48,306 bases of DNA. Origin: Prasinococcaceae sp. CCMP 1430 (Eukaryota; Plantae; Prasinodermophyta). Location of the stretch: assembly GCA_013416795.1 (NCBI GenBank), contig RQSC01001337.1:7593-55898 (forward strand), written 5' to 3'. Shown here one piece after another: positions 24,579 through 29,381 of the stretch. Both the position numbers and the translations under genes were made by a program. The notes under the pieces are model-generated. The model worked only from the letters and a program-made list of their open reading frames with translations, had not been told where the DNA came from and searched no databases. Every line of letters starts with the position of its first letter. Position 1 is the stretch's first letter.

Positions 24579-24793
24579 CCACAGAGGCACACGCGCGACA
24601 CGTCCTCGCCTTGGCAGTGCCTCGGCCCCGTTCCCAGCGCCCTGCTCAGGTAGATGGGTGGGTGGCGACGTGCGAATTCAGCAACCCACGCCACAGCAGG
24701 GCGTGGGGATCGCATCGCAAAAATCACAATTGTTACAGTACATTTTTTATCCTCCACCGCTTGCTCTACCGACGCCCAGCGCGACAGCTCGAG

Positions 24794-27700
24794 CTAGTCG
24801 CCTTGCTCACCGATCGAAAAGAGCCGGCGCAGGTCCTGTGTTCTCGCCTTGGCGGCTTCCGCGGGGGACAGCTTCCGCAACGCCCCGGAGCCGATAGCCG
24901 CCTTGGCCTCCTGCAGCTCCAACAGCTTCTCTTCGAGAGTGTCCTCGGTCACTGCGCGCCCGCGAGGAAATACGTCAGTGTGCGACCGGGGAGCGCCGAG
25001 CACGCTTTGCGGCGTGAATGGCTTGAGCGGCTAAGCGCCGTGCGCGCGCGCGCCCGAATGCGAAGGGCGCTGCATCAGGGATGACGCACCGAATCTCGTG
25101 ACCGTGACTGGGAGCGTCTGCCCAAGGCGATGGACTCTATCCCAGGCTTGCGCTTCCACCGCCTCGTTCCACCACAGGTCCATCATAAACACCCGATTGG
25201 CCGCAGTGAGGTTGAGGCCTTGTCCGCCAGCACGCGTAGAAACCAGCAGCACGCGCGCAGTACCGTCTTGCAGCGCATGCATCGCGGCTGCACGCTGTTC
25301 GGCAGTGCGCGAGCCATCGATGCGCGCCGTGGTCCAGCGCTCGGATTTTAGGCTGGCCTCAATGATGTCCAAAAAGCTAGTGAACTGGCTGAAAACCACA
25401 GCCCGCTTGTCAGGCCCCTCCGCACGCATGCCTTCTAGGCACTCGAGAAGCGCCGCGACCTTCGGCGGCGTGGTCTCGCTCGCCGCCGGAGGGCCTTCTG
25501 CTCCCGTCCCCGCCCCAGCGGAGCCGTCGTTGGCCACGCGTCGCTTCTCGAGCTCGGCAATAGATAGCAGGTCGCCGAGGCGGAAGTCCTGCCGGCACAT
25601 TGGACAGCGCGCCGTTTGCTGCTTGCGGCGCGGGTCGACGTCCATGACTCTCATGATACAAGGCTTGCAGAACGAGTGGGAGCAATTTCGCAAAATCCGA
25701 ACCTCAACATCGGACTGCGGCTGCAGACAGATGGCGCACTCGAAGTCATCCTCGCCGTCATCGAGGGCGCTCTTAAGCCGCGTAAATAGGTTTGCTACTT
25801 CCTCTTTGGAGAGATCCGGGGCTCCACCGCTCGCGCGGCGTGCCTTACCTGCAGCGGCGAGCATTTTTGCCGCAACGTCCAGGCGCTCGGGAGGCACCAA
25901 AGAGCGCGCGCAGCACGCCTGGCGCAGTCGCATGATGCATTCGAGAATGGACATGTAGTGCTCTGTCGCAGTGCCCAACTCAATCGCAGCGGCGATGGCC
26001 ACCCTCGCGCTGTCGAAGAGCGTCGAATAACTTTCGCGGTGCGGCGGGTCGAACACAACCTTCTGGACGACGATGGTCTTTGGAGGCAGTTCAGCTCCCA
26101 GCACGCTCTTCGGCCTGCGCAGGCTGATGGTCTTAAGCAGGAGCCGCAGGCGCGCCAGTCCGGCTCGGTCACCTTCGCGGATCGGGCGCGCAACCGCGCG
26201 ATTGAAGATCTGAGGCTCGTTGAGTGGCTGAGCTCCAAGGAAGGCCAGAACGCCGTACACATCCCCCGCGCTGTTCTGAATCGGCGTTCCAGTGAGCGCC
26301 CACCGCAGGCGGGCGTGCAGGGCACAGACCGCCTTGAAAGCCTTGGTTTGCCTGTTGCGTACAGTATGCGCCTCATCGAGAACGGCTCGGTGCCAACGCA
26401 CGGACAGAACGCCTGGTGGTGGCGCCGGCTTTGCGCCGAGAGAGCACGCGTCCAGGTAAGCCTCGTGGTCGGCCAGCTCTCCACTGAGGGTGCTGTACGA
26501 GGTGATCACCACGTCAGCTTCGCGCAGCCTAGGCGCGAGCGCATGCCTGCCCGGTCCGTGCCAGACCACAACTGTCAGAGTACCGTGAGCGATGTGCTCC
26601 TCTATCTGCGTCGCCCAATTTTCCAAGACGGACACAGGCGCGACGATCAGCGTGCCTCGGGCACACGCAGCGGCTGGGGCTGTCGTAAGCCGTTTGGCCC
26701 TCCCCGTGCTTTGAGCGCTCGTCTTTCGTCGCTTTGCCGTCGGCTGCAGCTCCCTAAGCCGCGGCGCTACAGCATTGCCAGCGTAGAGCGCCGCCGTCCC
26801 CCCCGCCGCGTCGAGCGCGGCCCACGCACGCGCGGCGAGAGCGTCCTTGTTCCCGGATTTGCTCACGCACGACACTACACACAATTCGCGTAGCTGATTC
26901 ACCTTGAGCAAGAGCAGGTCACGCTCTGTAGAGAGCGCGCGTCCCCACAGTTCTCGCGCACGGTCAAGCATCTGCACCCACGTTTTGATGAACGGGGCAT
27001 TAGACTGACACTCAGATGCACCCTCGAGGAGCGACGCCGGCCCACCAACCTTCGCGAGGGCAGCCCACGCGCGCGCGGCCAGAGCGTCCTTGTTGCCAGA
27101 CTTTGACACAGCCGACACCTGACAGAGCGTGCGAAGTTGCGCCAGCGTGAGTGCAGTCTGAAGGTCGCACGAGTCGGATGCCACTCGTCCACAAACCTCG
27201 CGTACTACTGAGAACATCTCGCGCCATGTGCTGGCAAATGCGGGCGCAAAATTCGAAAGAGCCAGCTCCGACGAAGTCGTGGCAGTGGGCACAGGGGCAT
27301 CTTCTTCGCTGCCCTTCGCGTCTGCGATAGCAGCAGCGTGACCAGGAGTCTGAGCGGCTTCGCTCAGAGTGGCCGAGGGGCACTCGTAGACCACACCTGT
27401 GGGCGGGTTGGACAGAATGACTGCAAGCGTTTGTAAGGTCTTGCCGTTGCCCATGTCGTCTGCGAGGAGACCTCCAAATACCGGCGATGGCCGCGCTGTG
27501 GTCGAGGTACTGGTGACAGAGTTGTAAAAAACCTGCCTGCCCAACTCTAGTCGCTCTTCAAAGAATGTCGGCAGGACGCTCGGGGCCTGCCGCTCGCGTG
27601 AGAGCATCCAAGCAACGCCTCTTTTCTGGTGCTCTCGAAGGGATGACGTGAGTTGCGGGGGCTCGACGAAACTGTCGGTGGATGCGCCCTCCTGCTCAGA

Positions 27701-28924
27701 AGCCAGCTTGTCGAAGAGTTCATCCAGTTCCCTTTGAGCACGGGCAGGGTTGAACTCGTACGAGACGCCCAAGGCGCCGCGCCCGCCGCCGCCCTCGGTG
27801 CTATCATATGCGCCGCTCCCGCTCGGCCCGCCGGGCAGTGCCGCGCCCCCCCTCCGCAACACATGGCCAGCCAGCCGTAGATTTTCCACAACCCACGACA
27901 TATCGCCCGGCGTCCCGTACAGCGCGAGCGTGACGGGCATCGTGAAGATATTGCTCAGATCTCGCGGGATCGTGGCCTCCACCCGCGGCCCCCCGGACGC
28001 GGTATGGTCCAAAATCCGGCGCAGCGCCGCGGCGGTGCCGCGCTTGATGTGGCCAACCTGCTTTCCGTCGAAGTTATCCACGCGGACGGCATTCGGATCA
28101 TACGGATTGTTCGGCTCTCTGACGAGGGTGACGTACTCACCCGCGTGGGCAATGCCCTCATAGTATCGGCAGCCTACCACAGCCGCTTCGAATTGCCCGT
28201 AGAAGACCTCGCGCGAGAACTCATCCCCGAGGTCGTCTGCAGCCATATGCTGCGTCTCGTTGACGGCGGCATCCGCCCGCGCGCTCACGCCTGCAGCAAG
28301 CGCGGCAGGCGCAGGCGAGCGTAACGACGCCGAGGGCGGCAGAGCTGCGGGCGCAGGTGCAGGTGGCTCCGCAGGCTCCGCGCCAAAAGTGAGCGAGGAG
28401 CATTGGGGCGACCGCTGCCGTATGGCCTCGCGGATGGACGAGGGCAGCCGCCCGTACCCTGGATGTTGGCCACGCGGAGCGCGCGCGTGTGCGAATTAGC
28501 GCGAAGGAGAGGCAGTGACATCGCGTGCGCGATCGAGAGCGTGTTCGCACGCATCGCACGCACCCTCGAAGTTCTTTGGGTTGCCGTTGCGGTGGCACGC
28601 AAAGTGCCGCCATTGGAAGTACTCGCCCCAGTCGCCATGCGCCTTCAGCAGCTCGCGCAAAAAATGGCGCCAGCGGTCAGCGTCGGTGCGCAGGGACGCC
28701 GTATGTGCGTGCGTGGCGGCGTTTCCACCCTATGCGTGCGCGCGTGTTTGTGTAGGTGTGCGGGGCGGTGTGGGATGGGGTAAGGGAGGGAACTCGCACA
28801 GCGTGCTCCCGGCCCCGCTACGCACCTCAGTGCCCACGCGCACCGAGCCGCGCGCAATATTGGACCCGCACGAGCGGCAGCGCGCGCGGCCGCTCGCCGC
28901 GAGCTCCACGCGCTTGCGTGGCAT
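24794..28924 (-). CDS. HLTF/RAD5-like SNF2 helicase-E3 ligase: zf-PARP-like finger + HIRAN + SNF2_N (two SAP-motif inserts) + RING + helicase C; about 1234 aa
   Basis: Exons 28924-28826, 28642-28564, 28458-25090 and 24951-24794 total 3705 nt in frame. HIRAN (VVGCRYY...LVREPNNPYDPNAVRV...QVGHI), GGLLADDMGNGKT, VLDEAH, ALTGTPIQN, RING CAIC...CSHSFCKPC...CPMC, VVFSQF and QAWDRVHRLGQ. Confidence 0.9.
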
Positions 28925-29381
28925 CCCTGCTGCCGCGCGCCGCCGCCACTGCGCAAGCGCCCCCGCCGTGCGCGGGGTGCGCGCGGAACGGGGTGGGGGT
29001 GGGGTGCGGGGGGGCGGGGGGAAGGGGGGCAGGGCACCCCGCCCAGCGTCTGGCAGTGCCACTCGCGCGTTGCTGCGCTGCTGCAGAGAGCTCGCCGTGA
29101 GCCGTTTCGAAAGCGCAATGCAATGTGATGGCGAACATCCATCCGGACGTCAAAATGCATTGAGGCGGAGAAAAGCCGCGGGCGCGCGCGAGCGCCGGCG
29201 CGACACACGGCGTGCGTGCGTGCGCCGCGTGGGCACAACTCCTCGTACTGGCGTCGCGCGACCTGCCCCACGCCTGCGCCTGCTGCGGCGCCCGGGCGCT
29301 GGCTTCACGCGCGTGAGGCGCACGAGCTGGTGACGGGCCGGACGCCCTCGGCGTCCGCGTCCGCGTCGGCGTCGGCGCGAA

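What the first reader, a model, noticed from the sequence alone, without database searches (positions are those of the whole stretch)
24794..28924. Hidden PARP-type zinc finger fused to a HIRAN-SNF2-RING (HLTF/RAD5-like) helicase
Seen in sequence: the ORF track starts this gene at 28288, but two small upstream exons (28924-28826, 28642-28564) splice in phase into it, with GT-AG ends and CTGAC/CTAAT branch-like sites. They encode MPRKRVELAASGRARCRSCGSNIARGSVRVGTE-AHGDWGEYFQWRHFAC...NFEGYGRLPSSIREAI. Established: this fits the zf-PARP pattern (VE.A.SGRA.C..C...I....R.G...W.H..C followed by the G...L helix), the break/nick sensor of PARP1 and DNA ligase III. HIRAN binds 3'-OH ends at stalled forks. 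Inference: one polypeptide combines nick sensing, 3'-end binding, fork reversal and ubiquitin ligation. I do not know this architecture for canonical HLTF or Rad5, so it may be a lineage-specific fork-repair machine.
Basis: partly seen in the sequence, partly recalled or inferred. Interest (0 to 1): 0.85.

Follow-up and report, generated by a model that had tools for sequence, protein, structure and literature searches.

The report
PARP zinc finger on HLTF-like helicase
The two small upstream exons are real and put a PARP-type DNA-break-sensing zinc finger on the front of an HLTF/Rad5-like fork-repair enzyme, but this exact protein is already in UniProt and the same design is common, though unstudied, in mushrooms and several algae.

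Summary
Confirmed. The minus-strand gene has four exons (28924-28826, 28642-28564, 28458-25090, 24951-24794).

The 1234-aa product is 100% identical to UniProt A0A7R9Y7S4 of Prasinoderma coloniale, an early-branching green alga. The genome annotation model (1263 aa) uses another acceptor that puts 29 residues inside the finger.

Domains:
- zf-PARP above Pfam's cut-off, with the C-C-H-C zinc ligands and a PARP1 Zn1-like fold
- HIRAN, with the HLTF 3'-end pocket residues as I recall them
- an SNF2 motor interrupted by two SAP-like modules
- RING and Helicase_C

The "lineage-specific" idea fails. All 120 listed hits (of 253), nearly all named Agaricomycete fungi, carry zf-PARP and HIRAN on an SNF2 protein. 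So do Aureococcus, Rhizochromulina, Hemiselmis and marine metagenome proteins. I found no paper describing it.

Most likely this is a damage-tolerance fork remodeller and PCNA ubiquitin ligase whose finger adds recognition of nicks, gaps or junctions. That function is inferred, not shown. The first-stage scan also noted this stretch and its SAP duplication. Interest is modest.

The parts
28826..28924 (-). Exon 1 (33 codons): start codon and first half of the zf-PARP finger, with the CxxC pair (C16 at 28879-28877, C19 at 28870-28868).
   Evidence: Sequence. X1 transcript contig reaches 28917 and joins to exon 2. Homologues start at the same Met.
28643..28825 (-). Intron 1, 183 nt, GTGCGT...AG, with CTGAC about 34 nt before the acceptor. 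An in-frame alternative acceptor (exon would start at 28729) is used by the public genome annotation model.
   Evidence: Joint 28642/28826 in the X1 contig, absent from DNA run X8. The 29-aa insert in P0450 maps here.
28564..28642 (-). Exon 2 (79 nt): the DWG loop and the HxxC pair of the finger (H46 at 28606-28604, C49 at 28597-28595).
28459..28563 (-). Intron 2, 105 nt, GTGCGT...AG, with CTAAT about 37 nt before the acceptor.
   Evidence: Joint seen in X1 and X2 contigs.
25090..28458 (-). Exon 3 (3369 nt): C-terminal helix of the finger, a Pro/Ala-rich linker, HIRAN, the SNF2 motor with inserts, RING, and most of Helicase_C.
28412..28924 (-). zf-PARP domain, about aa 1-75, encoded across exons 1-3.
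   Evidence: Pfam PF00645 at 48 and 41.1 bits against a cut-off of 39.3. phmmer to PARP1 Zn1, E 3e-8, with ligands aligned. The AF2 model of the most similar homologue found (P0002) matches only PARP1 and LIG3 fingers.
27950..28201 (-). HIRAN domain, aa 146-229.
   Evidence: Pfam 69 bits. E 3.5e-24 to the human HLTF HIRAN structures, with RYY, NNPYD, GH and FTMP motifs conserved.
25901..27631 (-). SNF2-related ATPase N-lobe, aa 336-912. Walker A (GNGKT) at 396-400, DEAH at 754-757, TGTP at 782-785. A roughly 250-aa insert lies between motifs I and Ia.
   Evidence: Pfam 230 bits. Motifs. Insert alignment.
26780..27265 (-). Tandem duplication of an ~81-aa module, each copy with a SAP-like helix-extended-helix motif (starting at aa 496 and 577), inside the motor's lobe 1.
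   Evidence: One search shows the repeat. SAP is below threshold here (18.3 bits against a cut-off of 23.9). It sits at the same insert position as the above-threshold SAP of relative P0132 (35.9 bits). Relatives P0002 and P0003 have one copy.
25595..25738 (-). C3HC4 RING finger, aa 967-1014, between the two motor lobes.
   Evidence: Pfam RING models at 22-29 bits. Cys/His pattern intact.
25121..25462 (-). Helicase_C lobe, aa 1059-1172, with motif VI (DRVHRLGQ).
   Evidence: Pfam 76 bits..
24952..25089 (-). Intron 3, 138 nt, GTGCGT...AG, with CTGAC about 25 nt before the acceptor.
   Evidence: Joint 24951/25090 in X1 and X2 contigs, absent from DNA run X8.
24794..24951 (-). Exon 4: conserved C-terminal tail of the Rad5/HLTF motor, and the stop codon.
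   Evidence: The tail aligns with homologues.

Best explanation
This is the Prasinoderma coloniale member of the HLTF/Rad5 family. It is one 1234-aa polypeptide with the domain order zf-PARP, HIRAN, SNF2 motor (with two SAP-like inserts), RING, Helicase_C.

Shown here: the gene model, its splicing, the domain identities, and the intactness of the zinc ligands, ATPase motifs and RING, plus the conservation of the motifs I recall as the HLTF 3'-end pocket.

Inferred from what is established for HLTF, Rad5 and the PARP1/LIG3 fingers: the enzyme acts in DNA damage tolerance.
- HIRAN captures the free 3'-OH of the nascent strand.
- The SNF2 motor translocates on duplex DNA to regress or remodel the stalled fork.
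- The RING, with an Ubc13-Mms2-type E2, extends ubiquitin chains on PCNA.
- The N-terminal finger gives the same molecule a second sensor of DNA discontinuities (nick, gap or ss/ds junction).
- The SAP-like modules add duplex DNA affinity.

Together these would load or hold the enzyme at stalled forks or at post-replicative gaps. The finger joined this family at least once long ago and is kept in distant lineages, which argues that it is functional and not decorative.
For: Gene model and splicing. Identity to UniProt A0A7R9Y7S4.

zf-PARP:
- Pfam score above the gathering cut-off.
- Best PDB sequence match is PARP1 Zn1, with C16/C19/H46/C49 aligned to C21/C24/H53/C56. The two Arg I recall as the phosphate grip (R13 and R29, matching R18 and R34) are conserved.
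- C, C, H, C and the second Arg are invariant, or nearly so, across 15-18 algal and fungal homologues.
- An AF2 model of the most similar homologue found has pLDDT 85.5. All 28 significant PDB fold matches are PARP1 Zn1/Zn2 or the LIG3 finger, TM 0.63-0.78.

HIRAN: E 3.5e-24 to human HLTF HIRAN, with conserved RYY, NNPYD, GH and FTMP motifs.

Motor and RING motifs are intact.

Conservation of the whole architecture.

Context from papers: human HLTF physically interacts with PARP1 at damaged forks (PMC7719709 abstract). Per the abstract of PMC3435320, the gene for the fission-yeast PARP-finger protein Hpz1 is in many fungi fused in frame with that of Rad3, the ATR homologue. Pairing a PARP finger with replication-stress proteins therefore has precedent.
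Against: - No biochemical or genetic data exist for any member with this architecture.
- The finger is atypical. Its loop between the ligand pairs is 2 residues shorter than in PARP1 Zn1. The Pfam match covers only the first 53-71 of 87 profile positions. The full-length score (41.1) clears the cut-off (39.3) narrowly.
- A single finger may bind DNA weakly. PARP1 uses two fingers, and LIG3 uses its finger together with a DNA-binding domain (my knowledge).
- SAP assignment in this protein is below threshold.
- The transcript's 5' end was not captured.
Confidence: 0.7

Rival explanations
1. The finger is a real zf-PARP fold but does not sense breaks. It serves as a general DNA or chromatin tether, an autoinhibitory lid on HIRAN or the motor, or a protein-contact module.
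For: The inter-ligand loop is shortened and the Pfam coverage is partial. The Cys spacing varies in the family (CX2C in algae, CX5C in fungi), so the domain tolerates drift. The long low-complexity linker to HIRAN would allow intramolecular contacts.
Against: The two Arg I recall as contacting DNA phosphates in PARP1 Zn1 are conserved. A hydrophobic or aromatic residue followed by Gly is conserved at the loop tip, where I recall the base-stacking residues of PARP1 lying. Every characterised zf-PARP finger binds DNA discontinuities (my knowledge of PARP1, LIG3 and plant ZDP).
Confidence: 0.2
2. Two isoforms are made by alternative 3' splice sites in intron 1 (28642 or 28729). The longer one carries 29 extra residues inside the finger, so splicing would switch the sensor on and off.
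For: Both acceptors are in frame and follow AG. The public genome annotation (PRCOL_00006629-RA, 1263 aa) uses 28729.
Against: The only transcript contig across this intron uses 28642. The MMETSP-derived UniProt protein equals the short form. All homologues lack the insert. Contigs drop rare variants, so a minor isoform is not excluded.
Confidence: 0.07
3. The finger exons belong to a separate small gene or are a chance ORF, and the helicase starts at the internal Met (aa 131, 'MAADD...').
For: ORF-style gene calls in public assemblies start there (P0001 and P0451).
Against: A single contig links exons 1, 2 and 3. The Pfam score is above the cut-off. The N-terminus is contiguous in homologues from transcripts and from other phyla.
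Confidence: 0.02

Closest known systems
Human HLTF (SMARCA3)
   Same: HIRAN, SNF2 motor with an embedded RING, and Helicase_C, in the same order. The HIRAN domains match at E 3.5e-24 with the RYY, NNPYD, GH and FTMP motifs conserved. Animal HLTFs are 35-36% identical over about 46% of the query.
   Different: HLTF has no N-terminal zf-PARP and no SAP modules in lobe 1. In humans the link to a PARP finger is in trans, through binding to PARP1 (PMC7719709), not in cis.
Saccharomyces cerevisiae Rad5 / S. pombe Rad8
   Same: Same family and same HIRAN-SNF2-RING logic. Presumed role in error-free damage tolerance and PCNA polyubiquitination.
   Different: No PARP finger. I know of no Rad5-type N-terminal Rev1-binding region here and did not test for one. 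No ascomycete Rad5 was available for the tree, so orthology to Rad5 rather than HLTF is not resolved.
Agaricomycete 'SNF2 family N-terminal domain-containing' / 'DNA repair protein rad5' proteins (e.g. Coprinopsis cinerea CC1G_01912, Schizophyllum commune, Serendipita indica G4TAY3)
   Same: Identical domain order: zf-PARP, HIRAN, SNF2, RING, Helicase_C.
   Different: The fungal fingers have CX5C spacing and match the full Pfam profile at 64-67 bits. They have no SAP insert. In the tree they sit with animal and chlorophyte HLTF, not with the algal clade, though one common clade is not rejected (p-AU 0.07).
Algal homologues: Aureococcus anophagefferens 'helicase', Rhizochromulina marina A0A7S2SCS7, Hemiselmis andersenii A0A7S1DN32
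   Same: Same clade (99 SH-aLRT) for Aureococcus and Rhizochromulina; Hemiselmis was not in the tree. Same CX2C finger, and the DWG loop in Aureococcus and Rhizochromulina. Aureococcus has a SAP-like motif at the same insert position.
   Different: One SAP-like module or none, against two here. Only 34-47% identity.
PARP1 Zn1/Zn2 and the DNA ligase III zinc finger
   Same: Same fold and the same C-C-H-C zinc site. The Arg I recall as gripping DNA phosphates are conserved.
   Different: A single finger, with a loop 2 residues shorter, attached to a motor-ligase rather than to an ADP-ribosyl transferase or a ligase.
S. pombe Hpz1 and the fungal Hpz1-Rad3(ATR) gene fusions (PMC3435320)
   Same: A PARP-type finger, free-standing or fused, paired with a replication-stress protein.
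   Different: A different partner (a kinase, not a SNF2/RING enzyme).

Membership tests
zf-PARP (PF00645) | Profile score above Pfam's gathering cut-off | tested here: met
   48 bits on the 82-aa N-terminus and 41.1 bits on the full-length protein, against a cut-off of 39.3. Only profile positions 1-53 or 1-71 of 87 are matched.
zf-PARP (PF00645) | C-C-H-C zinc ligands with roughly 26-30 residues between the pairs | tested here: met
   C16, C19, H46 and C49 align with PARP1 C21, C24, H53 and C56. The spacing is 26 residues against 28 in PARP1 Zn1. The ligands are invariant in 18 homologues.
zf-PARP (PF00645) | PARP1/LIG3 finger fold | tested here: met
   AF2 model of P0002:1-85 (57% identical to the window's finger), pLDDT 85.5. 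All 28 PDB matches at E <= 0.001 are PARP1 Zn1/Zn2 or the LIG3 finger. The test was on the homologue, not on the window's own residues.
zf-PARP (PF00645) | Binding to DNA nicks, gaps or ends | not testable with these tools
   Only the conservation of R13, R29 and the loop-tip W38-G39 is seen.
HIRAN (PF08797) | Profile score above the cut-off, and the 3'-OH pocket residues of HLTF | tested here: met
   69 bits against 24.7. RYY, NNPYD, GH and FTMP align with HLTF R71/Y72, N90-D94, H110 and F142. The residue roles and numbering are from my memory of the HLTF structures.
Rad5/16-like SNF2 ATPases (HLTF/Rad5 type) | Intact ATPase motifs I, II, III and VI, with a RING inserted between the two lobes | tested here: met
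   GNGKT, DEAH, TGTP and DRVHRLGQ are present. The C3HC4 RING at aa 967-1014 lies between SNF2-rel_dom and Helicase_C.
Rad5/16-like SNF2 ATPases (HLTF/Rad5 type) | Groups with HLTF-type proteins in a tree, apart from SHPRH and proteins without HIRAN | tested here: met
   Quick IQ-TREE of 30 rows. The algal clade, fungal finger clade, chlorophyte HLTFs and animal HLTFs fall within one group of 26 rows (SH-aLRT 82, drawn open). That group also holds the long-branch, HIRAN-less Zopfochytrium row. SHPRH and two other HIRAN-less rows lie outside. Taxon sampling is thin.
Rad5/16-like SNF2 ATPases (HLTF/Rad5 type) | Fork regression, dsDNA translocation and PCNA K164 polyubiquitination | not testable with these tools
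   Needs biochemistry.
SAP (PF02037) | Profile score above the cut-off | tested here: inconclusive
   18.3-18.6 bits against a cut-off of 23.9 for copy 1. No hit at E <= 0.01 for the isolated modules. The homologous insert of P0132 scores 35.9 bits and aligns at the same place.

The most novel reading that the evidence does not exclude
The zf-PARP-HIRAN-SNF2-RING design is ancestral to a large part of eukaryotes. It is kept in Prasinodermophyta, stramenopile and cryptophyte algae and in mushroom-forming fungi. On this reading, animals, land plants and yeasts lost the cis finger and replaced it with recruitment through PARP1 in trans. The finger would then mark an original coupling of nick or gap sensing to fork remodelling. 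The algal and fungal proteins would be natural single-chain models of the human HLTF-PARP1 partnership.
Probability: 0.15. Interest if true: 0.55.

Novelty: new variant of a known kind. Interest (0 to 1): 0.35.

Why it matters
HLTF and Rad5 are central to error-free damage tolerance. How they find the right DNA structure is still debated. A conserved natural fusion of a PARP-type discontinuity sensor to HIRAN, the motor and the RING works as a 'Rosetta stone' hint. It suggests that nick or gap sensing and fork remodelling belong together, which echoes the reported HLTF-PARP1 interaction in human cells (PMC7719709).

Because the same architecture exists in genetically tractable mushrooms (Coprinopsis, Schizophyllum), the idea can be tested directly.

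For genome annotation, the case shows two things:
- ORF-style gene calls lose the finger.
- The published P. coloniale model splits the finger with a wrong acceptor.

It is not a new kind of machine, and the sequence itself is already public.

Tried and rejected
1. From the first named hits (Aureococcus, Rhizochromulina) I took the window for an ochrophyte. This was wrong. The exact-sequence cluster look-up shows Prasinoderma coloniale. The GC content of 69.8% given in PMC7455551 fits the window.

2. 'Lineage-specific architecture' is rejected.

3. I tried to decide between one origin and several for the finger.
- The tree separates the algal and fungal finger-bearing clades.
- The fingers differ in Cys spacing.
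- The AU test does not reject a single clade (p 0.07), and parsimony is tied.
- The question is left open.

4. Literature: five term sets pairing HIRAN, HLTF, Rad5 or SNF2 with PARP-finger terms found no description.
- The single 'HIRAN' + 'PARP-type' hit was the author name 'Hirano'.
- A Toxoplasma SNF2 survey lists zf-PARP and RING in a figure legend without saying which protein carries them. This is a lead only.
- The two P. coloniale genome papers do not mention the gene.

5. SAP: the isolated modules give no Pfam hit, so I do not file them as SAP members.

6. I did not hand the spliced protein to the structure tool, because it accepts only unaltered references. The most similar homologue found, P0002, was folded instead.
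Full report
**1. What is in the sequence.**
On the minus strand an ATG at 28924 opens a 99-nt exon ending at 28826. It is followed by GTGCGT. A 79-nt exon (28642-28564) and the long ORF (from 28458) follow, behind AG acceptors. A further 138-nt intron (25089-24952) splits the 3' end, and the stop codon ends at 24794. Joined, the four exons give 3705 nt, or 1234 codons, with no internal stop. All donors read GTGCGT. CTGAC or CTAAT motifs lie 25-37 nt upstream of the acceptors.

**2. Transcript evidence.**
I laid contigs of four public runs on 24600-29300.
- A 2583-nt contig of run X1 covers 26050-28457, 28563-28641 and 28825-28917.
- X2 shows the 28458/28564 joint.
- X1 and X2 both show 24951/25090.
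- DNA run X8 holds the stretch in one unspliced piece and shows none of these joints.
- X1 and X2 are marked 'RNA?' by the tool. Their intron-less contigs are what one expects of cDNA.
- The X1 contig ends 7 nt inside the CDS, so the 5' UTR is not defined. Homologues from other organisms begin at the same Met.

**3. Whose gene it is.**
The 90%-identity cluster of the nearest database protein contains UniProt A0A7R9Y7S4 of Prasinoderma coloniale, 1234 aa. It is identical to my spliced model at every residue. P. coloniale belongs to Prasinodermophyta, a phylum of green plants. Its genome has 69.8% GC (PMC7455551), in line with the window.

The 'hidden' finger is therefore already in a public protein. 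The genome annotation model PRCOL_00006629-RA (1263 aa) differs only by 29 residues inserted after residue 33. That corresponds to an in-frame acceptor that would start exon 2 at 28729 and places the insert between the two ligand pairs of the finger. The transcript contig and all homologues support 28642. ORF-style calls in public assemblies start at the internal Met and lose the finger altogether (P0001 and P0451).

**4. Domains.**
- *zf-PARP.* Pfam gives 48 bits on the isolated N-terminus and 41.1 bits on the full-length protein, against a cut-off of 39.3.
  - Against PDB sequences the best match is PARP1 Zn1 (E 3e-8). C16, C19, H46 and C49 fall on C21, C24, H53 and C56. R13 and R29 fall on R18 and R34. 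The loop is two residues shorter.
  - The ligands and the second Arg are invariant, or nearly so, in 15-18 algal and fungal homologues. The DWG loop is invariant in the five closest algal sequences aligned.
  - An AF2 model of the most similar homologue found has pLDDT 85.5. Foldseek finds only PARP1 Zn1/Zn2 and the LIG3 finger at E <= 0.001, 28 hits, TM 0.63-0.78.
- *HIRAN.* Pfam gives 69 bits (aa 146-229). It matches human HLTF HIRAN structures at E 3.5e-24, with the RYY, NNPYD, GH and FTMP motifs conserved.
- *SNF2 motor.* Pfam gives 230 bits for SNF2-rel_dom (aa 336-912). Motor motifs I, II, III and VI are intact.
- *RING and Helicase_C.* Several RING models match aa 966-1015, where the C3HC4 pattern is intact. 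Helicase_C scores 76 bits (aa 1059-1172).
- *SAP-like modules.* Between motifs I and Ia lies a roughly 250-aa insert holding a tandem duplication of an ~81-aa module with a SAP-like motif.
  - SAP is below threshold here (18 bits against 23.9).
  - It aligns with the above-threshold SAP of relative P0132 (35.9 bits) and sits where P0004 and P0005 have precomputed SAP hits.
  - The nearest relatives have one copy, and the fungal proteins have none.

**5. How common the architecture is.**
- A region search with the finger-plus-HIRAN part of the most similar homologue found returned three Aureococcus anophagefferens 'helicase' models and marine metagenome proteins carrying PF00645, PF08797 and PF00176.
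- A profile of finger plus HIRAN against 1.84 billion representatives found about 15 clusters (at 50% identity) with both domains in one stretch. Pfam confirmed the domain set (zf-PARP, HIRAN, SNF2, and RING where the protein is complete) in nine of them, though three fingers and one HIRAN score below Pfam's cut-off.
- Names include Rhizochromulina marina, Hemiselmis andersenii, Coniferiporia weirii, Serendipita indica and Tulasnella.
- A region search from the Coniferiporia protein gave 253 hits. All 120 listed carry zf-PARP and HIRAN on an SNF2 protein, most also with RING and Helicase_C. Nearly all are named Agaricomycetes, spread across many genera, among them Coprinopsis cinerea, Schizophyllum commune, Trametes, Suillus, Amanita and Serpula.
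- The architecture is therefore frequent in databases, under automatic names only.

**6. Phylogeny.**
I built a quick IQ-TREE of 30 proteins with the finger region cut away wherever the HIRAN motif could be located.
- The Prasinoderma protein falls in a starred clade (99) with Aureococcus, Rhizochromulina, Cladosiphon and marine metagenome proteins.
- It does not group with the chlorophyte HLTF-like proteins (Gonium, Chlorella).
- The fungal finger-bearing proteins form their own clade (100), joined at 93 to the chlorophyte and animal HLTFs.
- Fungal fingers have CX5C spacing and algal ones CX2C.
- Holding all finger-bearing clades together costs 5.2 log-likelihood units, p-AU 0.07. A single origin is not rejected.
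- Two gains, or one gain plus one loss, are equally parsimonious. I leave this open.

**7. Mechanism.**
The shown part is the anatomy. The inferred part rests on HLTF, Rad5 and PARP1 knowledge.
- HIRAN holds the nascent 3' end.
- The motor regresses the fork.
- The RING extends ubiquitin on PCNA.
- The finger adds recognition of a nick, gap or junction, and the SAP-like modules add duplex affinity.

Two papers give context. Human HLTF binds PARP1 at damaged forks (PMC7719709). Per the abstract of PMC3435320, the gene for the fission-yeast PARP-finger protein Hpz1 is in many fungi fused in frame with that of Rad3/ATR.

The main rival is that the finger has another role, as a tether or a regulator. 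The shortened loop and partial profile match keep that alive.

**8. Literature.**
No paper in the searchable library combines HIRAN, HLTF, Rad5 or SNF2 with PARP-finger terms in a way that describes this architecture. A Toxoplasma survey of SNF2 ATPases lists zf-PARP and RING among domains drawn in a figure, without comment.

**9. Verdict.**
The domain reading is supported. The claim of an unknown, lineage-specific architecture is not. This is a catalogued but uncharacterised variant of the HLTF/Rad5 family, and the window's protein is already in UniProt. Interest is modest. Its value lies in a testable hypothesis and in an annotation correction.

Noticed in passing
window 28643-28729 (minus strand): The public genome annotation model of this gene (PRCOL_00006629-RA, 1263 aa) uses an in-frame acceptor that would start exon 2 at 28729. 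This puts 29 residues between the CxxC and HxxC halves of the finger. The transcript contig and the UniProt protein use 28642.
   Followed up: partly
window 26780-27265 (minus strand): Tandem duplication of an ~81-aa SAP-like module inside motor lobe 1. The nearest relatives (P0002, P0003) have a single copy and the fungal homologues none, so the duplication is recent and specific to this lineage.
   Followed up: partly
window 28985-29045: A long C-rich tract (minus strand; G-rich on plus) lies just upstream of the start codon. Many unrelated DNA contigs of run X8 match short pieces of it, so it looks like a low-complexity motif repeated in the genome. It could be a promoter or 5'-UTR element.
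   Followed up: no
window 29235-29275: A 40-nt stretch (29236-29275) is shared with otherwise unrelated contigs in runs X1 and X11. In DNA run X8 the main contig differs here by about ten substitutions and four small deletions (29235-29266). This looks like a variable or repeated element upstream of the gene.
   Followed up: no
tree (proteins P0012, P0013, P0121, P0131, P0004 and others): The Prasinoderma (green lineage) protein groups with stramenopile proteins, not with the chlorophyte HLTF-like proteins. This could be old paralogy or gene transfer between algae.
   Followed up: partly
P0126, P0128, P0138 (representative library): Some proteins have many PARP-type fingers in a row. The tool reports 11 matched stretches in the 1376-aa P0126 and 5 each in P0128 and P0138. 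Their origin and function are unknown.
   Followed up: no
P0003 (ENA, 858 aa) and P0289 (Serendipita indica model): Their N-termini begin in the middle of the finger's C-terminal part, so gene callers have probably missed upstream finger exons there too. The architecture is likely under-counted in databases.
   Followed up: no
P0301, P0305 (Sanghuangporus 'ARC19'): These fungal homologues also carry PF05856 and are named after it. That looks like two neighbouring genes merged into one model.
   Followed up: no
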